A DNA stretch of 64,000 nucleotides from Klebsormidium nitens (lineage: Eukaryota > Plantae > Klebsormidiophyceae). A program made the position numbers and the translations under genes. Location of the stretch: NCBI GenBank assembly GCA_000708835.1, contig DF237135.1, positions 62,001-126,000 on the forward strand, read 5' to 3'. A model generated the notes under the pieces. The model saw nothing but the letters and a program-made list of their open reading frames with translations. It had not been told where the DNA came from and ran no database searches. This document shows positions 18 through 59,500 of this stretch, one piece after another; the stretch's first letter is position 1, and every line of letters starts with the position of its first letter.

Positions 18-3000
18 ATGTCTTTGCCAAAGAAAGATGGCGGCAGTGAGCTCAGCAAAGAACAGGTAGGGTGACCGCAGCCCCGTGGTATTTTTAATGA
101 AGGTCGTTGATGGCATGCGACTGCAAAGTAAGTTGCCCATGCGAAGGGTGGCTGTGGGTGCTGCCTGATAATGGTGGATCAACGATGATAATGGTTGTCA
201 ACTCACGAGTAAATGACGCAGCATTGTAATCGACAAAGGGTGACCACTTTACTGATTCAATGTCAATTAAGAGGTAAAGGTGCGACCACCTATGCCATCA
301 GCATGGCGCCAAATGTCTTGAGAGCGTGTGTGGTCATTGTAGTTCGAAATATGTGCCATTTCAATGTGTTCAACGGCCTGTATGGAGGTTTCTCCGAAAG
401 CCCTGAAATCTTGGATGTCGTCTGGTTTACAGAGGAATTCTTCCTTTAGCAGTCTTATTGCAATCATATGCGGCAGCAGGGTTCGGATCATTATTTCTGT
501 TTGCTGCTCAATTGCAGGTCACCAAGGCAGTCACCGCCCTTTTGAAGTGGGTGGACAGTCGAAAGAAGCAGCAGAAACCGCAGCTTCTGGATGACGATGA
601 CATGTTCCATCTCGTCATTTCGCTTAAGAAAACTCCGGATAGAGAAAAGACAAACCCCTACAGAATGTAAGTAGGTCGTAACCACGAGGCGACTTTTCGA
701 CTTTTTCGCTGTGTTTTGGCTATCTGAGCATTGCAATGGAGCTTGGTTGGGGTTTGTAGAGGTGGAGTTACCTCTCATAGTGGTACTGGCTGAACACAGC
801 ACGCTTTCTGGAAGTAGGAAGACTGTTGGGCCACGTCTTTGTGTGTCCTGGGAAGGGCCATCATAGAAAGGTGTGCGGTGGATGAATGTGGTGGTCATGA
901 CGCTCACCGTGCTGCAGACGATGATTGTGGTGGTCGTGATGCTCACCTTAAGCTGTCTCACTTGCAGATCAATTCCTCATTCCCTCTACCCGCTGGATGC
1001 AGCTCGCGAGGTTTGCTTGCTGGTGAAGGATGTCTCTGGTAAGGAAGCTAAAGCCGGCTACATTTACCGTACCAACACGCCGGTTGGGCAGATTCTTGCC
1101 CAAAAATCAATTACGTATGTTTTGAAATTTGGGCAACTCATTTTGGAATTCTTGAGAATTTGGAATTTGTGGAATATACGCTCAAGAATCCTTTTTTAAC
1201 CAGCCAAAATATATCAAAAGATCTCATATTAGAATTGTAATTCATTTGAAAATTTGGGCAGAATGAAAAAACGAATATCAATAGTATTGAAAATTTTGGG
1301 CAAAATCAAAACAATTAATTGATGCCCAACCGGCGTGTTGGTGCGGTATGTTTGTTTCTGTTCACACCGCGCAATACTTGCACTGTCTCATTTAATGTTG
1401 GGCTCCTTTCGCTTCATCTGCAAGGGGGCAAAAGTGTCTTTGTATCTTCTCAGCGGCCCGCTCTTGCTGCCCTGTTAGTGTATTGTGGCACCTGTCATTA
1501 TGCCGTTACATGTAGCAGTGGGCACCTTGTTGATTGTCTCCTGAATCCAGTCTTCTCGTTTGTAGGGGAGGGGCAGAAAGAAGCCAAACACCAGATAGCA
1601 GTAGAAGCTGGCACTGGAGTCAGTAAGGTGAGGGCACTTCAGCAGCTTCACATTGTTGGTGGTGCTCACTTGGTGCGATGAACTTAATTACTAGTTCGAG
1701 AGGTTATAATCTGCCTATTCCCCGTAGCATTATTGCTAGGGTGTGATTGAAGCACGAGGTCAAAAGAGCCCGGCAATCGAGGAAGGGATCCAATGTGCTC
1801 GACACGTATTCCAAACGTGTTCGCATTATGCAGGTGATAGGGGTGTCAAAGCTGAAAACCAAGTACAAGCCCTATGAAGCGAAGCGAAGGTTATGTGGCT
1901 CGTGAGTGACTTACGAGCCTTTCTCAACTCCGTCCGTTTGCCGTTCAGTATGTCACCTCGTGAAGTCGTACGGGCTTCATCTGCCATGTCAGCATCTCGT
2001 CAGATTCTTGGATATGATTCGTTTATGCACGTGGTTTCCCCGGGTTGGTTCGAGCTTTTACCCAAGGTGTGTAACATTACAAAGTCTTGGATTAAGGCCT
2101 AAACGATCAACTCGACATCCAAGTTAGAAAACGAACCAGAGCATCATACAAACTCAAGCTTTTTCTTGGGCTGAAACTTTCGTTCCCTCAAAGTTGAGGT
2201 AAGCAGGCAGAAGTTCTCAGCACCTCTGATTTTGTGCCTTGCATTTGCAGGTACGACCTCTTTGTTGCCGACGACAGAATACTTGGCGTTCTTCCAAAGC
2301 TCCTCGGAAAGACTTTCTTCAAAAAGAAGAAGTGAGGGCTCAGTTTACTGGGTTTGTTTCCTTTGATATGGTGCGAATGAAAGCACAATTTGTAGTAGCT
2401 CTTGGTGGTTTCGGCTTACGGCCTTCTGAACAGGCAGATCATAACAGGTCCTTTCAAAGTCGACCAACTGCTTTGCACGACCGTCGGATTATAACGCCTT
2501 CGGGCATGGGTGGAAATTGTATGATCAGCGTGATGCAGTTCAAGGTTTTCATGGCACCTTTCCGGCTGGACAATTCTGACGATTGATGTGTCGCCACATA
2601 AATGGAGCCCGTTCTTGTAAGTTCTTGAAAATAAAGGGACCCTCAGTTCGCTGCACGTCATCTGTTAGACCTTCGTCCCGAAAACGCAGCACTTCATCGG
2701 ATGGAGCCTGACGACCTACGAACTCGTCACTCCTTGGGTTTTCCTAGTTAGGCCTTACGAAACGAGGACTTACGAAACGAAAATGTTCGACCATTGGCAG
2801 TAATAAGCTTTTGGGTAAACTCGATGTTCCTGGGGCGTAGGCTGAGTCGCTCAATACGGACCGCCAATCTGATTTGCTAACAAGCGTAGTCGCCTTTCTT
2901 CAGGCATCCCATCCCGGTTACTCTCAAGGGCAAGAACTGGGCAGGGGCGATTCGAAAAGCATGCGATTCTACGTACCTCTACGTCAGCGGAGGATCTTGC

Positions 3001-3979
3001 AGGTGCGCCTCGTTATGTCCCTATATTCAGAATGTGTCTCGAAGCGCGCGTACCAAAAGTTCTGTTTCCACTTGGAAGGTCTCGAGCACGGTTCTGGAGT
3101 TTGGTTCTTTTCGGTGTTCTCCGGTGTATTGAAGGCATCGAAGCCGTTAATACGGGCCAGGTCGGGAGTTGGAGAGGAGTCGGATTGTAGTCGCCCCTTA
3201 TCGTATCTGTCTTGAATCAATGATTGCGAGAGTCGTCGACAGGTTCACGTACAGTGGCACTCGAATCCCGGGCTTCCTCGGAAGTAGGTCTCGTGCCTGC
3301 CTGGTTGTGATATGCTGTGAGGATGCTGATAGTCTTGCTCATAAGCTACGCTGTGAGTCTGACCCACGCTGTGAATCGTTTCTCAATGCAGCGACGTCCG
3401 AGTAGCCCGGATCTCCCAAGAGCCGCAAGAGGTTGTGGAAAACGTCGTGGCCGCAGCGGAGGGCATCAGCAAGATCCTCCCAAAGAAGTGGGCCAACATC
3501 CAGGCACTGTATCTCAAGACCTCGGTGAGTGGCGGGCTCTGCAAGACCTGGTTCAGAAGGCGCTGATTTTGAGCACTCCAGATGGAATCTGAGGAGATTG
3601 TAGCACTTACTTGCGTGTGGGAGGAAGTTGCAGAAACAAATAGAGAGGGTGGGTCAAAAACTTCTTGCGTTTAAGATCCGAATGTCCGTCTCAGGAGTGC
3701 GCTTTTATTGTGCTCGTCAAGAAGAGTTGCATCATCTTTAAAAAGGATGCACCAAAAGTTGAGCTTCGCGTCTTCAACCTGGCTGTGAGCCGAAAATGAT
3801 TCTTGAGCAGCTGGATACTTTCTGATGCCTCGATGGCACTTTGGAATTTGCTTATCTCTGTGATTGATTTTTTTCAGGAGTCCGCTGCTCTGCCTCTTTA
3901 CAACGCCCTGCCCGATACAACGGCGAAGATTGCAGGAGGCTCGGGGGTGGTCGTGGCGACTGGTATCGAAGCTGCTTAG
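18..3979 (+). CDS. RSL1D1: Ribosomal L1 domain-containing protein (RSL1D1/Cic1/Utp30 family), 9 exons
   Basis: Exons 18-65, 518-666, 968-1038, 1566-1627, 1834-1901, 2251-2331, 2904-3002, 3392-3524, 3878-3979. All introns are GT-AG and in phase. The translation includes KAVTALLKW, LLDDDDMFHLVISLKK, IPHSL..EVCLLVKD, VIGVSKLKTKYKPYEAKRRLCGSYDLFVADDRI..LPKLLGKTFFKKKKHPIPV, W.NIQALYLKTSES.ALPLY, recognised from memory as the plant ribosomal L1-domain family. Confidence 0.92.
1067..1346. mobile_element. MITE (Tc1/mariner, Stowaway-like) in intron 3 of RSL1D1
   Basis: 24-bp TIRs at 1067-1090 (ccgtaccaacacgccggttgggca) and 1323-1346 with 1 mismatch. TA on both sides (1065-1066, 1347-1348). AT-rich non-coding interior with repeated aatttgggca motifs. 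Confidence 0.8.
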
Positions 3980-5199
3980 CTCGGGGCTGAGCGCATATAT
4001 ATACGTCTAACGTCCCTTCAAGACTATGACAGACAGCGGTCTTTTAAGGGGTCGCAACATGCTCGTTGCTTCCGGTCTTAATACGACTTCATAGGCGGTT
4101 AGGATTTGGAGGTTGCTAGGAACTGCTGCTTCGAGGTCGCGACGAGCTGCAGACTGGAGTGTTTTCTTCCACTAATCCTTTCATTAGTCATAAGTGCGTC
4201 TGGCACAGCCTGATTTTCAATGGGTGCATCCACGGAACTCAGATTTTTTGAAACTGATATCGAAGCTTCACGTCCCAACTGATATTCGAGTCTCGAACTT
4301 TTGCGGTGGACTTCCTATTTGCATAGGCCCGGCAACCCTTTTTGTGAACCTTCACTGGAATTGTAAGCGCTTGACGGCCTAGTATCAAGTCCATGCACAT
4401 GGCATGTAAACTCCAAGCTGACCACGGTCCTGTGCGCTTGAAAGTGGGTCTGATCACTACGCTGTATATATATTGCGAGGATCCTTATTTTGGTTGCTTT
4501 CGCGCTAAGTTTGGATCAGTCAGAAACGGCAGCTTATGTACTCGTATCCAAAGTCCTGGGCATACGCGGCGATTGAATATAGGTAGAATATCCTAAATGA
4601 TACATTCGATCCGAGCATGCTCATGGGAAAATGCAATGCTGACTCCCTAGGTCGAGATCGTCTCTTTTAATTTGGTGAAATTAGCTCGAGTCTGCTTGCA
4701 TCGGTGGGATCCTTATAACGATGTTGCATGACCTGAGGCGTCTTAATGCTCTGATAGAAGTTGAATGCTGGTACAAGTTGCGTATGTTACGAAATCGCGT
4801 AGAAAGGATGCACGACAAATACCTTGCTAAATCATGAACACCCAGGAGCGATGCAAACTCGAAGTGGTTGATAATTACAGATCGACTTGCACATGGGACG
4901 CGGTCTTGTCAAGAGCTCGTCTTTTCAGAAACTGCCAGCCGAAACTACACTCCCTCCCCTAAGAATGACGGGGCGATTGCAATGTAGGGGTCCGAAGCCG
5001 TTGACTCTTATGGGGGGCCACGAACAAATTGACGTGTATCGTGCCTTGTACTATTAAGTTTGCAGCGCTTTTGACTGATCAAGCATGTAGCAACCCTTGA
5101 GCGCACTTAAGACCATGTGTTTGTTCAGGGAAGTGGCTAGAACTGATGTGTAGGCAGGCGTGGCCCGGCGTGATGATTGGAGGAGGATGTTGTATGGAT

Positions 5200-5401
5200 T
5201 GGAGTGAAGACGGCAGAGGAAGATTCCTAAGCCTCTGGGGCGTTGCCCCGGTCAGAGGGAGCTCCCGGAGGAGCCCCCCCTACCAGACGGAGGCCTGCAG
5301 CCTCGACGTCGGGGGATCACCCCCAGTGAGCAGACACCCCGGCAGAGCCGGGGCTCACGGCGCACGAGTCTGCTCCTCGGCGCGACTTCTCACTATCTGC
5401 T
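5200..5401 (-). ncRNA. Putative structured non-coding RNA, family unassigned
   Basis: Seven helices plus a closing stem cover most of 5203-5394. G.U pairs and a C(UCCG)G tetraloop favour the minus strand. TATAAAT lies at 5430-5424, about 30 nt upstream. No convincing coding exon follows. Confidence 0.55.
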
Positions 5402-5423
5402 GAGACGAGCCACACTTGGCCAC

Positions 5424-5490
5424 ATTTATAACGTTACAAACACCGGAGACCTTGTGGGTCGAGTGACCTGGTAACGTCACCAGCGGTTCG
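5424..5490 (-). promoter_or_regulatory. TATA box, USE-like motif and CCTGGTAACGTCACC element of a probable divergent promoter (ncRNA / QCR8)
   Basis: Minus strand: TATAAAT at 5430-5424 and GACCCACAAGG at 5460-5450, similar to the plant USE RTCCCACATCG, with a 19-nt spacer. A 15-mer at 5467-5481 is identical to 52170-52184. CACGTG lies at 5497-5502. Confidence 0.45.
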
Positions 5491-6263
5491 ATCTGTCACG
5501 TGGCACGGTCTGACGGCTACGATGCACTCTCACTGGAACGACGTGCGCTTCCGTTTAAAGAATGAACGACTTTCGTTATAGAAAAACGTTCGTTTCGCCG
5601 CCGTTCAATTCGCCCTTCCCTTCAAATGCGCGCGAGGCCCCGAAGATTACAAGGGCGCAGGGTGAAATTTGGGTGAGTCACGCAGCCCCGTGAATGGGTG
5701 GCGATATTGCTGTAACTTGTTAAGGCACGAACAAGCACACCTGTCTAGGTTGTCGATTGCACGGGACGGCCGCAACAGTCATCTCAAACCGATTCGCAAT
5801 TCTGGTGTGATCAGTGCAACTTTGAATAGGCCGCGCAACATTGAGTAAGACTTCTGACCTCTCATGCACCGACCAAGCTTGAGCTTTGCGAAACGAAACG
5901 GCGGCTCCAATGCACGAAGGCCTCGGATTAATGGTCTGCCGAATATCACTCGCTGACAGTTCGATGAAGCATGCTGCATGGTAGTCGAAGCGGCGTACGT
6001 CGCCCCAAGAAACGGCAAGAGTCTGATCGCTTGAAGCGTGAAGAGCTACTTCCCTAATGTTTGCTTCGCTGCCCCTCTAATACGATTGCTCTCCCCTGCA
6101 GGGCATGCGTGGCCGCAATCCATCTCACACAGAGCTACGTTGATTGCAGCTCTCGAGGAGCCAATAATTCGTTCTGCTTAGGGCCGCTTTGTGAGGTGCC
6201 CGGGCAGTTGAATTTGCTGCTTAGGAAGAGGCCTGATCCCTCGAATGGTAATCGGCAGGGGCG

Positions 6264-7277
6264 ATGGGCAAGAAATGGCCGCCCCCGGTGCATTTGAAAG
6301 AAGTGGTGTACATGCTGTCCCCTTTTGAGCTGGTGAGTATCAGAGACAATGCAGAGCTTGATGCGCAAGTGCTTTTGATTGGAAGAGTGGCTGCCTGCTC
6401 CATGCACCACGTTTTCCGCACGCAAGCGGTATCTGACATACTGACAGTACGATGGAACCTCATCTGAGCGCACGTTTTCATCGGTGCGCTCAGCGCATGT
6501 ATATGACGAGTTTTTCTTCAGCTAGAGCTTGTGCTGATCTCGGATTCAGGAACAGACCATCTGATTCTTGTTCCTGGGGAAGGTTTGCATGAATTGAGAG
6601 GAGGCTACTGGGCTCAGCTGCACGCTTGGATTCCCATTAAACGGAGGCTCGTCAACGACCCATTTGTCTTGTGAATGATTCTCTTGCGGCCCCGTTCAGA
6701 ACACTGGCTTGACTTACCTATCTGTTTGCCCGAGATTTGCGGGTCGTTCCGTGCCATCAAACAAAGCAAGTGCTTCGAGCCTGGACAGCTCACGGCGGGC
6801 AGCTGAACCCTGTGCTATTAAACTTCTTTTTGATTCTCCGAGTCTGCAGAAGGTGATGTCCGGCCTGTGGAAAAACTTCTGGCCCAGCTTGAAGTCGAGT
6901 CTGCGCGAGCATCGATCGGACCTCCTCGTTTTCATCACTCCCATCGTCGGGACGGTCGCTTACGCCAGGCGTTATGAGGTGAGACGTGCCAACGTGCGAT
7001 CGCTAAAGAAATTCATCACCTTCAGAAAAATCATGTCTCGCACAACGCGAATCTCAGAAAGACATCTACTTGGAAGCATCTCATGACTTCTGGTCAAGGA
7101 GCTGCACGCTAGCTGCACTGCCGTGTCTCTGCTAAGTAACTTGCCATCTACTATCAGCTCGCGTCTTTCCAGATGAATCGTCTCATCCCGAGGTTGCCAA
7201 TCCGACCGTCTGGTCCATCGTACTTGAAAGTGGGCGCCCGCTTGCAGGAAAGGGACAAGCTTGAGGACCGCTACTAG
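6264..7277 (+). CDS. QCR8: Cytochrome bc1 complex subunit 8 (QCR8/UQCRQ), 3 coding exons, 75 aa
   Basis: Exons 6264-6332, 6850-6978, 7248-7277 give MGKKWPPPVHLKEVVYMLSPFEL-KVMSGLWKNFWPSLKSSLREHRSDLLVFITPIVGTVAYARRYE-ERDKLEDRY*. This matches the plant QCR8 pattern (V.LK.VVY.LSPF.QK.M.GLWK ... TP.VGT..YA ... EKLEHRF). Confidence 0.92.
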
Positions 7278-8487
7278 CAACGTATACGTACTTCCTTTTC
7301 GCCGCCGTATGGTTGGCCTCCGCTAGAAGCACGTACGCGTTTATGCTGCTGCTGGTAGTGACGAAAATGCACGTACGTCCGTAGGTTAATCGTCAAAGTA
7401 TGAAAGTAGACTCTCTGCAGAACGCTCGATCATGCAAGTTTCATACACGCTTCCTTGTGCAACGTGCAAATTGGAATCGTTTGATCGACGTTGAGAAAGG
7501 GCATTCCTCACATCTTAACGGTACGGTCTCTTCTGTTGATAATCTTTCGCGGAGCCCTCGACTGACAAGCCGCGCGCAACCAGACATGGACCTTTTTTAT
7601 GTCACCTTGATCCGTGCAATGTGTGGTCTCCAAGAGCAAGCTACCTGCGGTTCAGTCATCAAATTGCGAGTGCATGCGGGATAGGCATGATGTCAAACCG
7701 CCAGCACAGTTGGACTTATGCATTGATGTACGTTCTGGCCTGCAACTTAGTTCTCGCCTTGAATGAGAGCCGCTCGCGGGCCCGGTGCATGCCTTCCGAC
7801 CTCCATCCAAACGTTCCATCCTTTTGGGCCTGGCCCACCGATAAGAATGGCGGCCTTCGAAGGTCAGGCTCAGAACGAATCCAAGCTAGTATAAGTACAA
7901 CATGGCAATGATGCATGGTGATTGAGACTGAAAGTTACATGTTAAAACTTGAAGCCGGGTGTCGCCGAAGGCTTCAATTCGAGGCCTTTAAACAGCACCT
8001 GCTTATGCTTGACGTTTCGGACATGCTATACGAGTTTTGCAGTAGGCGGCTTACGCCCGTCGGCTGCGGACTTCACATACTCCAGCTGGAGCCGCCAAGA
8101 TGCTAGCGGCTGCTTTCGGCCCTATATCTTCGCTCCAGCGGGTTGGCCCACAAAAGAGGCGGCTTTACTGGCTGGCCTTGCACCTGCTTATTGTAATACA
8201 TACTCGCTTACTCCTGGAACTTTCTATCCGGGCCCCCGTAAACGGGGCTCAGCCGTCGAGTACCCTCATTACGAGTTCTGCTCACCATCATATGTTCAGC
8301 ACATATCCCGTTTGTTTCAACACAGTCGCTCCATCGTCCAGCCGTGCCTTTCCGCTCCCCACCAGACTTTCGTCCACCCGCGTGTCCGTCCCCACTCCAC
8401 GCAACCTCCCCGCATGGGCGATGCGCGTCATTCCTTAAATCACCTCCGTCTCCACACGATTCAGCGTCTCCGTCTCTCACCCCGCCC

Positions 8488-11968: not shown

Positions 11969-12695
11969 CCTTCCGAGCAGGCTTTTGAACTGGCCCGCGC
12001 CCTGTTAATGCAACAGCTCCCGCAGGAGCAGCACTATCTTAATCAAATTGAAAATGGCACTCCAGCGAAGCTGTGGCCAGAAAGAACCTAGAGCGCTCTA
12101 CTTGCTTCTGCGCCACCATGCCACTGCCAGCCTGGCTGGCGCCAATTTTCAGTTCTCATGAACTCCAGTGGCGCCTGACCAGCGCCAAGATGCCCGGAGC
12201 GACGCTCCTCCGAGCACATTAACAGTGCACTTCAGGTTTTTTCATACTCCTGGTACGGGGCTAGCGGGGCACCGAGGGCTAAGAGAAGTGAACCCTAACT
12301 TCGGTGTCACTGTTAGGGTTCCGGCAATGTGCAGCTTGCAGCGAAGAAATGGAAGAGAAAGGGCACAAAAACCTGAACTTGAAGTTGAAAGTTGCTTGCA
12401 TAGCAGCGTGTGCAGAACTCTCCTCTTCAATGACTTCATTCAATGTTTCAGTCAAGCACGCGCTCTTTACTATATTCCCTCTTTGAGCTGTCCGTGAGTG
12501 GCATGACTCCCAGCCCCCAAAGCACAGTTCTCACTAATACCGGGGAAGTGGAAAGAGGGTGCAGGCGCTGAGAATCAGAATACAGGTTTTGGAGACACAC
12601 TTTTCCAATGGTCATGCTGCCCCATATTGTTGCAATAGCGATACTTCAAGTTACTAAGGAGGGAGGCCGCAGGAGGTGGTGGCAACCTGAAGGCG

Positions 12696-56538: not shown

Positions 56539-59500
56539 ATGGGGCCCAAGAAGAAGAGCAACAAGCTGTCGACTTCGAGTGCGGGGAACAAAAGCCAGGT
56601 TGCAAAGAGCACAGGAAGTGCTGCAAAGGCTGCCACCAAAGTTGATATTAGCTCTGGCAATGAAGCAAGATTGCGACGGCTGCTCCTGAATGTCAGCAGC
56701 TCTGAAGGAGTCCTGAAAGATACAGACTCTGTTGAAGCATATGCCTCTGATAAGAAGGCTAGTAAGACCTTGAAAGATACTTACGATGCACTAACCCAGG
56801 AAGGTTTCACCAGAGAGCAAGTAGAGACCGTGCTGAGGTCCCTGCCACAGGTAGGAAGAGTTCAGCCCAAGTGATCAACGGATCTAATGCCGAGGTTTGG
56901 TGGTGGTGCGGCCAGCAAATGAGAGACTGGATGTGAACAAATAGAAGTGGGAATTGCATCGCGGCAGCATCTACTTCATGAGATTGCGCCAGCATTGTGC
57001 TGATGGAGGGTGGTGTAGCTGCATTCCTGCAGCAAGATGCTTGGACCGTCTTCTTGGCACATGTTCTACTTCAAATTCCACAAAAGGTGGATGTGTTTTG
57101 AAACCACTATTTTGTGCGATCTTTCTCCAATCTGATCTTCTGGTGGTAGACGGCGCATATGTTGCTGCTATGCAGGCTGCGGTGTCCTTAGAGTCCGCAC
57201 TGGACTGGCTATGTCTCAAGCTGCCAGCACACGAGCTGCCCCTAAAGTTCTCACGGGGCATACGAACAAGCGTTGAAGAAAGTGAGCTGACAAACTCTCT
57301 CCTGATCCTGTCCTCTGTGGATGAGAAGCACTGCGTTGTTGTGCTCTGAGGCACAATATGCACAGTATCAAGGAAGACCTTTTGGCTGTATGAGCTTCTC
57401 TGATTGTGCTGCCGCGTTCCCTCCAACTCTCAAAGGAACATAGGGGCCATCCACTGAAATACTCCAGTCTTTTATACCAGGTGGAGGCGTTCAGGTGCTT
57501 GCAACCGCTCGTCCTGGCGCTCCATCTCGCAAGGAGGTTGGAGCCTCGGCTCTCGAGGAAAAAGAGGCGCTTCAATCCCTCCAGAAGCCTCTGCTAGATG
57601 CCATTCCTGCCAGGAAAATTGAGGAGGATGGGAGGAAGGAACAAGCAGCATGGATTCGACAGTACTTGGATAAACAGGAAGAGACGTCAGAGGAGGAGGA
57701 GTCAGCAGGGGGGGATGAAGATGACTGGGAGGTAAGGGCCAGAGGGGTGGCTGATTAGTGTCACTCATCCACCAATCAACTGGTCAGCTTCCTTGGTGAG
57801 TCGACCAGCTGAGAGCAAAGGCAAGGGCAGAAGCTCAGGAGAGCCTTGCTCCAGCGGCCCTGTATTTCTACTGGCTCTTCTGCGGATTCAGCTCGCAAGC
57901 ACTAAAAGCTCCATCTGAGTATAAGGAAGCTTATGCACAGTTCACCTTGATGTGGATTTCTAGCTATCAATGAACGACGCTCAGTCTGATGTTGCTTGAA
58001 CAGGTCTGGGCCGACCCTCGAGAGCGAGAGCGGCGAAAAGCGAGCCGGGCAGCCGCCGCCCTTGATCCTGCGGTCAGAACGAGTCAGATCGCGGATGAGT
58101 ATGCTGCGGCCAAAATGGAGGCTGGAAAGGCCAAGGCAGCAGGAGACAAGGCCAGACAACAAGCTGCAGGGAAGATCATACGGGAGCTCAAAGAGGAGAT
58201 GGCAAGGCTAGGCAAGTGTTCCCCTTATGAGCTTGTTGCTCAAAAGGAAACACCTTGGAACAGATTTCCTGACTTCACATACAAGGACACTGTTTTTGAA
58301 GCCGAAAGACCAAGGACGCCCGCAACTTGCTATGAGTGAATGATGTGCGGAGCGATGGGAAATCGACTGGGACTTCAAGCTCGATTAGATCGAGGATCAC
58401 ATCTGCGTGCTTGATTTATTCTGAGAAGATTCGTTCTGACATTCTCAACAGCAGTTTCAGGTGCTGTACTGGCAGGCACGTCAGTGAATGACAAGGTCTG
58501 GTTCAGTATTTTTACAGGGGTGAAAGAAGATGATCTTCATTCGAAGCCGACAACGGGTTTCCAGGAGGAGGCAGGAGAGTCGATGCCAGGAGCGCCGGCC
58601 GGCGCAATTGCTGAAACAACCACAAGCGCTGAGGAAGGAGACTGGGAGTCGCTGGCTGTTTCGCCAGACACGGAACGTCCAGATGTTCCAGAAGCAGATC
58701 ATATCTCCAGGGTAGAGGAGATTGCGGGGCCAAGCGGAAGCAGCACTTCCGAAGTTCCAAAAATTGTCTCCACGACAAGTACGAGCACTGAGGCGACCAG
58801 GGCGGAGGAGGAAGAGGGTGGGATGTCGTCAATGTTCGACGAGGACACTTCGGACGTGGGGCTTCCGGACTCGGTCACTCTGATGCAGAAGCAGGCGCAG
58901 TTCGAGGAGCCGCTCGTGGCGTGGGGCACGGAGTCTGGGGGCAGCAAGGGTCGGCCTCCGGGGGGTAAGGGGAAGGGGCCTGCAAAGGGGGGCGGCGGGG
59001 GGGTGGACGTGCAACGGCTGCCGAAGGCGCTGTTGCAGCAGCACTGTCAGAAGGAGGGGTGGCCTGCCCCCCGTTTCGAGAAGCTGCCGGTTGGGGGCAC
59101 GAGAATCGAAGGAGGGGGGTATAGATACTCGGTGAGGGTCGAACGGCCGGGAAGGGGGAAGGGGAAGAGGGCGAATGCGGGCCCGCTCGACGTGCAACTC
59201 CCTGCAGACGAGGACGGGTACGATGCACGTTGACTTGTATCCTTTTTCTTGAGGTGTCGGTGCACGATCAAGCGCATCCTGGTGTTCTGCGCTTAGCGGG
59301 ATCCGTTCTTCCTTCCAGAATGCACCTCTCCCAGCATTTAGCGGCGAAAGCTGCGGTAGCTCTTGTCTGCTGCGACACTTTCAGATCCCGCCGAGAAAAA
59401 GTCGCCGCCATCGAGGCAGGAAATTTGGAGTCAATAATCCACGCTGTCGTTGGAAATCTTCATTGGGGGTTGAGAATTATACTTGTCACATACTGTAACG

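What the first reader, a model, noticed from the sequence alone, without database searches (positions are those of the whole stretch)
5158..5460. Unassigned ~200-nt multibranched structured RNA gene on the minus strand, with its own TATA box, head-to-head with QCR8
Seen in sequence (plus coordinates): 8-bp helix 5328-5335/5368-5375 enclosing a 7-bp hairpin 5337-5343/5347-5353; 5-bp hairpin 5311-5324; bulged 9-bp hairpin 5286-5310; 15-bp bulged hairpin 5250-5284 capped by C(UCCG)G, a UNCG tetraloop on the minus strand; 5-bp hairpin 5237-5249; hairpin 5214-5237; closing stem 5203-5213/5381-5394; optional outer 10-bp stem 5158-5167/5406-5415. Four G.U pairs form only on the minus strand; they would be A.C mismatches on plus. 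TATAAAT (5430-5424) puts the start near 5401, and GACCCACAAGG (5460-5450) resembles the plant snRNA USE. Against a standard assignment: the USE-TATA spacer (19 nt) is shorter than the ~24 nt of angiosperm Pol III snRNA genes, and there is no oligo-T terminator, Sm site, ordered C/D or H/ACA boxes, or TTTAGGG-type template. The U1-U6, U3, SRP and MRP P4 signatures are absent by eye. No coding exon was found downstream. Inference: an independently transcribed structured ncRNA of a possibly undescribed class. This is the best candidate in the window for a new system.
Basis: partly seen in the sequence, partly recalled or inferred. Interest (0 to 1): 0.85.

Follow-up and report, generated by a model that had tools for sequence, protein, structure and literature searches.

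The report
Hairpin-rich non-coding transcript beside QCR8
A 180-base GC-rich run of back-to-back hairpins next to the QCR8 promoter of this alga (probably Klebsormidium nitens) is real and weakly transcribed, but it looks like the start of a longer unspliced non-coding transcript, not a self-contained 200-base RNA gene with an snRNA-type promoter.

Summary
The structure is real. 5201-5400 is the most stable 200-nt stretch of the 64-kb window on both strands after correcting for GC. Minus strand z is -4.6, and no shuffle out of 200 folds as well. It holds six perfect hairpins per 200 nt, against a window mean of 1.1. Seven abutting local hairpins are robust (pair probability 0.7-1.0).

It matches no Rfam family even at E<=10, no tRNA-like frame, no telomerase template and no second copy in the window.

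Spliced assemblies from four studies show low-depth, unspliced contigs covering 4662-5376. They run straight through the proposed 3' end. A QCR8 5' exon starts at 5451, about 26 nt downstream of the TATA, so the TATA fits QCR8 at least as well.

The USE-like motif lies at the QCR8 start. Its spacer to the TATA (19 nt) fits neither Arabidopsis class. The first T4 run on the minus strand is 770 nt downstream.

Best reading: the structured 5' part of a 0.5-0.75 kb unspliced ncRNA running away from QCR8. The strand and any RNA-level function are inferred only. No homologues could be fetched, so covariation is untested.

The parts
5208..5384 (-). Core of the finding: seven abutting GC-rich hairpins with 0-1 nt linkers, 71% GC. 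They lie at 5360-5383, 5326-5358 (inner 5337-5353), 5311-5324, 5286-5310, 5250-5284 (15 bp, UCCG loop), 5237-5249 and 5208-5236.
   Evidence: MFE -104.4 kcal/mol, z -4.19, 0 of 200 shuffles as good. Pair probabilities are 0.7-1.0 in three transcript contexts, except the outer 5326-5331/5353-5358 helix, which varies from 0.12 to 0.60 with context. Rank 1 of 1277 windows. Highest hairpin count in the window.
5388..5405 (-). Weak 5-bp hairpin with an 8-nt loop at the predicted 5' end.
   Evidence: In the MFE and in the helix list. The closing stem has p 0.01-0.31.
5168..5207 (-). Unstructured C/A/U-rich tail with two copies of CUCCAAUC 22 nt apart. On the plus strand these read GATTGGAG, which are inverted CCAAT motifs.
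   Evidence: Unpaired in the 258-nt MFE, and largely unpaired apart from a few weak long-range pairs in the two longer contexts. Direct repeat D6 at 5175-5182 and 5197-5204.
5424..5431 (.). TATA element readable on both strands (TTTATAA on plus, TATAAAT on minus). It lies in the 76-nt gap (5375-5450) that carries no contig, between the two divergent transcribed blocks.
   Evidence: Sequence. The QCR8 5' exon contig begins at 5451 and the minus-side contigs end at 5374 and 5376.
5450..5460 (-). USE-like motif GACCCACAAGG, matching the plant RTCCCACATCG at 8 of 11 positions. It overlaps the start of the QCR8 5' exon.
   Evidence: CCCACA-N15-35-TATAAA occurs once in the window against 0.06 expected. 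The spacer to the TATA is 19 nt.
4662..5376 (-). Low-abundance, unspliced transcribed block that contains the hairpin chain. The minus strand is inferred, not shown.
   Evidence: Contigs: X1 4867-5374, X2 4662-5329, X6 4832-5195 and 5170-5376, X13 4987-5147. Depth is 2-8 with no joints. On the minus strand, UGUAA at 4879-4875 and AUUAAA at 4671-4666 lie just before two of the contig ends.
5451..5671 (+). Non-coding 5' exon of QCR8, spliced GT..AG to 6101. The coding exons are 6264-6332 and 6850-6978, plus a third.
   Evidence: Joint 5671/6101 in X1. Pfam Cyt_b-c1_8 on both coding exons. Exon borders.

Best explanation
The hairpin chain at 5208-5384 is the 5' ~200 nt of a low-abundance, unspliced, non-coding RNA of about 0.5-0.75 kb. 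It is most likely made by RNA polymerase II. It starts some 25-50 nt from the TATA-containing core of the QCR8 promoter and runs away from QCR8 on the minus strand, ending heterogeneously near 4867 and 4662.

Shown:
- the structure potential;
- the transcription;
- the absence of splicing;
- the absence of a known RNA family;
- the QCR8 start at 5451.

Inferred:
- the strand;
- the polymerase;
- the start near 5380-5401;
- that the hairpins act at the RNA level. They could, for example, give the transcript a compact, exonuclease-resistant or protein-binding 5' domain that keeps it detectable at steady state.

It is not a self-contained snRNA-type small RNA gene.
For: - All four runs carry spliced GT..AG contigs, so they are RNA assemblies. 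All four studies place low-depth collinear contigs on 4662-5376, with empty flanks at 4389-4661 and 5375-5450. This rules out read-through from the neighbouring gene and random DNA background.
- Two independent runs end at 5374 and 5376, next to the TATA. The other ends are ragged. Two of them lie just after UGUAA (4879) and AUUAAA (4671) on the minus strand. The neighbouring gene also ends just after a TGTAA.
- The plus strand has no such signal before 5376.
- The G.U pairs favour the minus strand: -104.4 against -94 kcal/mol, z -4.19 against -3.30.
- No joint occurs at the GGUAGG near 5283, and there is no coding ORF downstream.
- The 85-aa plus-strand ORF has no Pfam or protein hit.
- There is no Rfam family.
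- There is no T4 run for 770 nt.
Against: - Contigs cannot show strand, ends or abundance.
- Depth 2-8 is in the range seen on introns of the highly expressed neighbour.
- The contig ends at 5374/5376 are 25-30 nt short of a TATA-directed start, and could reflect poor coverage of very GC-rich hairpins.
- Promoter-upstream transcripts are rare in Arabidopsis (bioRxiv 10.1101/809194).
- CCCACA-N22-TATAAA is unexpected by chance (0.06 per window), so an snRNA-type promoter cannot be excluded. A processed small RNA would be invisible in these libraries.
- No homologue was available, so nothing shows selection on the fold.
Confidence: 0.5

Rival explanations
1. DNA-level feature with no RNA function. 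A GC-rich cluster of short palindromes sits in the nucleosome-free region upstream of QCR8. It was either created by mutation (for example template-switch events that make perfect inverted repeats) or it acts as cis-regulatory or cruciform-prone DNA. The weak transcript across it is incidental.
For: - Both strands are outliers (rank 1 on both; plus strand z -3.30).
- Most stems are perfect Watson-Crick pairs with 3-4 nt loops, like DNA palindromes.
- The cluster lies 70-240 bp upstream of the QCR8 start.
- Several dyads contain palindromic cores of the kind that transcription factors bind (GACGTC, GAGCTC, CTGCAG).
- Transcript depth is low.
Against: - Seven abutting hairpins are far more than other GC-rich parts of the window show.
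- All stem imperfections are G.U on the minus strand and none on plus.
- The region is reproducibly transcribed in four studies.
Confidence: 0.25
2. An independent gene for a discrete ~200-240 nt structured small RNA, driven by a plant snRNA-type USE plus TATA promoter on the minus strand. The longer contigs would then be read-through or precursor.
For: - A USE-like core sits 22 nt upstream of TATAAA, once in the window against 0.06 expected.
- The fold is exceptional.
- Another first-stage note reports a GCCCACA-TATA geometry elsewhere in this genome (unchecked).
- Weak plant 3'-box-like matches occur at 5087 and 5062.
Against: - The spacer is 19 nt, against 23-24 or 32-34 in Arabidopsis.
- The motif lies on the QCR8 5' exon start, and the TATA fits QCR8.
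- There is no T-run for 770 nt and no Sm site.
- Contigs run through the proposed 3' end in three studies.
- The closing helices are not predicted.
Confidence: 0.13
3. Relic of a mobile element (MITE-like, about 260 bp, bounded by the 10-13 bp inverted repeat 5158-5172/5406-5423) or another inserted structured sequence.
For: Terminal inverted-repeat-like arms (I3; outer stem). There is a sharp GC jump relative to the flanks.
Against: - The arms match at only 8/10 to 10/13 positions.
- No target-site duplication is visible.
- There is no second copy in 64 kb.
- The scan's index of this genome gave no look-alike (a blank there proves little).
Confidence: 0.06
4. Plus-strand product: either the 85-aa ORF 5146-5403 is a small protein gene, or the contigs are a plus-strand upstream transcript of QCR8.
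For: An ATG-initiated ORF spans the whole element on plus. Contigs carry no strand information.
Against: - The ORF has no homologue and no Pfam domain.
- Its G/R/S/P-rich composition is typical of translated GC-rich DNA.
- The contigs stop at 5376, before the stop codon at 5401-5403.
- There is no plus-strand poly(A) signal near 5376, and no splice from there into QCR8.
Confidence: 0.06

Closest known systems
Promoter-upstream / divergent long non-coding transcripts (PROMPT-like, bidirectional-promoter lncRNAs)
   Same: It starts within 76 nt or less of the start of a protein-coding gene, and apparently runs the opposite way. It is unspliced, non-coding, of low abundance and 0.5-0.75 kb long, with heterogeneous far ends.
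   Different: It is detectable at steady state in wild-type libraries of four studies, whereas such transcripts are rare and exosome-sensitive in Arabidopsis (10.1101/809194). Its first 200 nt are the most structured stretch of the window, which is not a described property of PROMPTs. The strand is not shown.
Plant type-3 (USE + TATA) snRNA-class genes: U6, U3, 7SL, MRP, telomerase RNA
   Same: A CCCACA-core motif upstream of a TATA box, followed by a compact GC-rich structured RNA.
   Different: The spacer is 19 nt, not 23-24 or 32-34. There is no T-run terminator, no Sm site or boxes, no telomere template and no Rfam hit. The transcript is longer than the proposed RNA. The motif and the TATA sit at the QCR8 start.
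tRNA-framed RNAs with large GC-rich inserts, reported by other agents for this genome (unchecked notes)
   Same: A GC-rich structured segment of 105-205 nt enclosed by a terminal stem, followed by a small hairpin with an 8-nt loop.
   Different: There is no T-arm, no A or B box and no acceptable cloverleaf. ARAGORN with introns finds nothing at default thresholds and only poor hits at 80%.

Membership tests
Plant snRNA-type (type-3) gene | USE (RTCCCACATCG) about 70 nt upstream of the start | tested here: inconclusive
   GACCCACAAGG at 5460-5450 matches 8 of 11 positions with an intact CCCACA core. It coincides with the first bases of the QCR8 5' exon. The USE of K. nitens itself is unknown to me.
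Plant snRNA-type (type-3) gene | TATA box about 30 nt upstream of the start | tested here: inconclusive
   TATAAAT at 5430-5424 is present, but the same element reads TTTATAA on plus and lies 20-26 nt upstream of the QCR8 exon start at 5451.
Plant snRNA-type (type-3) gene | USE-TATA spacing of 23-24 bp (Pol III) or 32-34 bp (Pol II) | tested here: not met
   The spacer is 19 nt. Reference values are from Arabidopsis as quoted in PMC8287931. Spacing in this alga was not available.
Plant snRNA-type (type-3) gene | Oligo-T terminator (Pol III) or 3' box (Pol II) right after a short coding region | tested here: not met
   The first T4 on the minus strand is at 4631, 770 nt downstream. Only chance-level 3'-box-like matches occur, at 5087 and 5062.
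Plant snRNA-type (type-3) gene | Discrete small RNA product | tested here: inconclusive
   Contigs run through 5158-5203 in three studies, but contigs cannot show ends, and small RNAs are lost from such libraries.
Any Rfam 15 family (U1-U6, U3, SRP, MRP, RNase P, telomerase RNA, snoRNAs and others) | Covariance-model score at or near the gathering threshold | tested here: not met
   There are 0 hits at gathering on the whole window. At E<=10 on 1001 nt and 301 nt, the only hits score 8-16 bits against thresholds of 35-76.
Telomerase RNA (Klebsormidium telomere CCCTAAAA/CCTAAAA) | Template of more than one telomere repeat | tested here: not met
   No permuted 8-9 nt template occurs in 5470-4600 on the minus strand. 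The motif is from PMC8287931.
Divergent promoter-associated lncRNA | Unspliced, non-coding, low-level transcript that begins close to a coding gene's start | tested here: met
   Contigs cover 4662-5376 with no joints. A 76-nt gap separates them from the QCR8 exon at 5451. There is no credible ORF.
Divergent promoter-associated lncRNA | Opposite strand to the gene; exosome sensitivity | not testable with these tools
   Only unstranded contigs were available. The minus strand is inferred from poly(A)-signal-like motifs and G.U asymmetry.
MITE / DNA transposon relic | Terminal inverted repeats, target-site duplication, multiple copies | tested here: inconclusive
   The inverted ends are imperfect, at 10-13 bp. 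No duplication flanks them. There is no second copy in the window. The whole genome could not be searched.
tRNA-derived RNA with a giant insert | Cloverleaf halves (acceptor, D and T arms) closing the insert | tested here: not met
   ARAGORN with introns of 10-1200 nt finds 0 genes. At 80% threshold it gives only malformed models.

The most novel reading that the evidence does not exclude
The hairpin string is the functional body of an undescribed structured ncRNA of Klebsormidium. It is either cut out of the 0.5-0.75 kb precursor as a stable ~180-240 nt RNA, or it acts as a structured 5' domain. It would be expressed from a compact promoter shared with, or interleaved with, that of QCR8 and using an snRNA-like CCCACA-TATA pair.
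Probability: 0.15. Interest if true: 0.6.

Novelty: new member of a known kind. Interest (0 to 1): 0.3.

Why it matters
If the fold proved conserved, this would be a new structured non-coding RNA in a streptophyte alga close to the origin of land plants, a lineage with almost no catalogued ncRNAs beyond the universal ones. It would also be an unusual case of two divergent transcription units sharing one TATA-containing core of about 50-76 bp. As the evidence stands, it is one lineage-specific, weakly expressed non-coding transcript with a remarkable but unexplained hairpin-rich start. That is useful for annotation and as a test case, but it is not yet a new system.

Tried and rejected
- **Rfam.** Gathering thresholds on the whole window, and E<=10 on 1001 nt and 301 nt, gave nothing credible.
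- **RNase P/MRP P4-like motifs (GAAGUC ... GGCUUA), seen by eye.** Rejected. There is no model hit, and the 5' motif is too close to the 5' end to leave room for P1-P3.
- **Telomerase RNA.** No template.
- **tRNA or tRNA with a giant insert.** ARAGORN, with and without introns, was negative.
- **Tandem repeat.** None.
- **Bacterial-type promoter or terminator scan.** None.
- **Repeat or transposon.** No second copy in the window and no look-alike in the scan index (a blank there is uninformative).
- **Coding.** The 85-aa plus-strand ORF has no homologue and no domain.
- **Homologue hunt 1.** A 21-mer from the 15-bp hairpin, searched against JGI metagenomes, gave one contig (L001) that shares only 25 nt, which is a chance match.
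- **Homologue hunt 2.** The QCR8 exon 2 peptide gave no candidates, so the route to orthologous loci through encoding contigs was closed.
- **Full sliding z-score with shuffles.** It timed out and was replaced by GC-regressed MFE.
- **Literature.** Nothing was found on Klebsormidium lncRNAs, hairpin elements or its USE sequence. The supplement of PMC8287931 is not held.
- **Other hairpin-rich windows (58526-58875, 12051-12325).** They are not similar strings of abutting GC hairpins.

Full report
**Setting.** Notes by other agents on the same genome name the organism as the charophyte alga Klebsormidium nitens. I did not verify this independently. The local genes are as follows.
- A plus-strand, intron-rich, strongly expressed gene covers 600-4388. 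Its exons match Pfam Ribosomal_L1.
- A plus-strand QCR8 gene (Pfam Cyt_b-c1_8 on two exons) has coding exons at 6264-6332 and 6850-6978.
- The QCR8 gene has a non-coding 5' exon at 5451-5671, spliced GT..AG to 6101.
- The finding lies between these two genes, directly upstream of QCR8.

- The minus strand of 5158-5415 folds at -130.3 kcal/mol, against -106.8 +/- 5.1 for dinucleotide shuffles. That gives z -4.62, and no shuffle of 200 folds as well. MFE and centroid are nearly identical.
- The plus strand gives z -2.37.
- For the core 5208-5384 the values are z -4.19 on minus and -3.30 on plus.
5201-5400 ranks first of 1277 on both strands, at -3.6 and -3.3 residual SD.
- It also has the window's highest count of perfect hairpins, six per 200 nt against a mean of 1.1.
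- Pair probabilities in three transcript contexts show seven robust, directly abutting hairpins. They lie at 5360-5383, 5326-5358 (inner 5337-5353), 5311-5324, 5286-5310, 5250-5284 (UCCG loop), 5237-5249 and 5208-5236.

- The 8-bp helix 5328-5335/5368-5375 is a true inverted repeat but has probability about 0.05.
- The closing stem has probability 0.01-0.31.
- The anatomy is therefore a string of hairpins followed by a 40-nt unpaired C/A/U-rich tail. That tail carries a twice-repeated CUCCAAUC. It is not a closed multibranch.

The G.U pairs are all on the minus strand: two in the 15-bp hairpin, one at a triloop closure and two in the outer stem. The z-score difference between strands is modest, so this is only weak evidence for an RNA-level constraint.

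**What it is not.**
- No Rfam 15 family matches at gathering score in the whole window. With relaxed filters at E<=10 on 1001 or 301 nt there is only noise.
- There is no tRNA, with or without long introns. I checked this because other agents report tRNA-framed GC-rich RNAs in this genome.
- There is no tandem repeat and no second copy in the window.
- On the minus strand from 5470 to 4600 there is no Sm site, no C box and no permuted Klebsormidium telomere template (motif from PMC8287931).
- The plus-strand 85-aa ORF across the element has no protein homologue and no Pfam domain.

**Transcription.** One stretch, 600-6500 (under the 6,000-letter limit), was laid with contigs of four runs from four studies.
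- The runs are labelled 'RNA?'. All four carry the seven GT..AG joints of the neighbouring gene, so they are RNA assemblies.
- All four place low-depth (2-8), fully collinear contigs on the candidate region: X2 4662-5329, X1 4867-5374, X6 4832-5195 plus 5170-5376, and X13 4987-5147.
- No contig covers 4389-4661 or 5375-5450. The signal is therefore neither read-through from the neighbour nor diffuse DNA background.
- No joint is seen at the GGUAGG near 5283.
- The contigs of three studies (X1, X2, X6) also run straight through the proposed 3' end at 5158-5203 and on for 300-500 nt. The RNA seen here is at least 508-668 nt long.

**Promoter.**
- The QCR8 5' exon contig begins at 5451. The TATA element (TTTATAA on plus, 5425-5431) is 20-26 nt upstream of it. 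The simplest owner of the TATA is therefore QCR8.
- The USE-like GACCCACAAGG (5460-5450, minus) sits on the first bases of that exon.
- CCCACA followed after 15-35 nt by TATAAA occurs once in the window against 0.06 expected. I therefore do not dismiss it.
- Against it, the 19-nt spacer fits neither the 23-24 bp (Pol III) nor the 32-34 bp (Pol II) spacing quoted for Arabidopsis.
- The first run of four T on the minus strand is at 4631, 770 nt downstream.
- From my own knowledge, unverified here: GTGGGTCG on the plus strand also resembles a class I TCP / site II element, a type common in plant promoters of respiratory-chain genes.

**Strand.** Contigs cannot give it. I infer minus for four reasons.
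- Two independent runs end at 5374 and 5376, beside the promoter core, while the other ends are ragged.
- Two of those ragged ends (4867, 4662) lie just after UGUAA (4879-4875) and AUUAAA (4671-4666) on the minus strand. The neighbouring gene likewise ends just after a TGTAA at 4362.
- The plus strand has no such signal before 5376.
- The G.U pairs favour minus.

**Best explanation (confidence about 0.5).** The hairpin string is the 5' part of a weakly expressed, unspliced, non-coding, probably Pol II transcript of 0.5-0.75 kb. It diverges from the QCR8 promoter, with the two units separated by at most 76 nt around one TATA.
- Such transcripts are rare and unstable in Arabidopsis (10.1101/809194).
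- Steady-state detection in four studies therefore hints that the structured 5' end may stabilise the RNA or bind protein. This step is inference only.

**Rivals.**
- A DNA-level palindrome cluster with no RNA role (0.25).
- A mobile-element relic (0.06).
- A plus-strand product (0.06).

**Limits.**
- No homologue could be retrieved. The metagenome scan gave one chance hit and the QCR8 peptide search gave none.
- The collections at hand hold no other Klebsormidium genome, so covariation, the decisive test, is open.
- Spliced protein models of QCR8 and the L1-domain gene were searched exon by exon only. The joined sequences were not built or searched.

**Verdict.** This is a real and statistically exceptional structure in a real but weak non-coding transcript. 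The snRNA-gene framing and the closed fold are not supported. I file it as a new member of a known kind (a promoter-associated lncRNA), with a 15% chance of being a truly new structured RNA.

Noticed in passing
window 600-4388 (+): A strongly expressed, intron-rich gene (at least 7 GT..AG introns, depth 65-400) whose exons match Pfam Ribosomal_L1. Its stop codon is at 3977-3979. Its 3' ends at 4361-4388 lie just after a TGTAA at 4362, which suggests a UGUAA-type poly(A) signal like that of Chlamydomonas.
   Followed up: partly
window 5451-7300 (+): QCR8 gene model: a non-coding 5' exon at 5451-5671, a 429-nt 5'-UTR intron, the ATG at 6264, coding exons at 6264-6332 and 6850-6978, and a third exon near 7240 that ends ...ERDKLEDRY. 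The four runs laid barely cover it (only one contig, depth 3.3). That is odd for a respiratory-chain subunit. It may be a weakly expressed paralogue or an effect of the read filter.
   Followed up: partly
window 5468-5505 (+): The QCR8 5' exon begins with a 5-bp hairpin (5468-5483), a B-box-like GGTTCGATC (5485-5493) and a G-box palindrome CACGTG (5497-5502). No tRNA is detected there.
   Followed up: partly
window 5175-5204: Two copies of GATTGGAG 22 bp apart. They are inverted CCAAT boxes on plus and CUCCAAUC in the unpaired tail of the minus-strand RNA. They could be NF-Y-type promoter elements or a repeated single-stranded RNA motif.
   Followed up: no
window 58526-58875 and 12051-12325: The next most hairpin-dense stretches of the window (40-52% of bases in perfect hairpins). 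Their folds are long-range and mixed, not strings of abutting GC hairpins. I did not work out what they are.
   Followed up: partly
L001 3130-3154: The metagenome contig Ga0335070_10016821 (61% GC) shares only a 25-nt GC-rich palindromic stretch with the 15-bp hairpin. This is a chance match and not a relative.
   Followed up: yes
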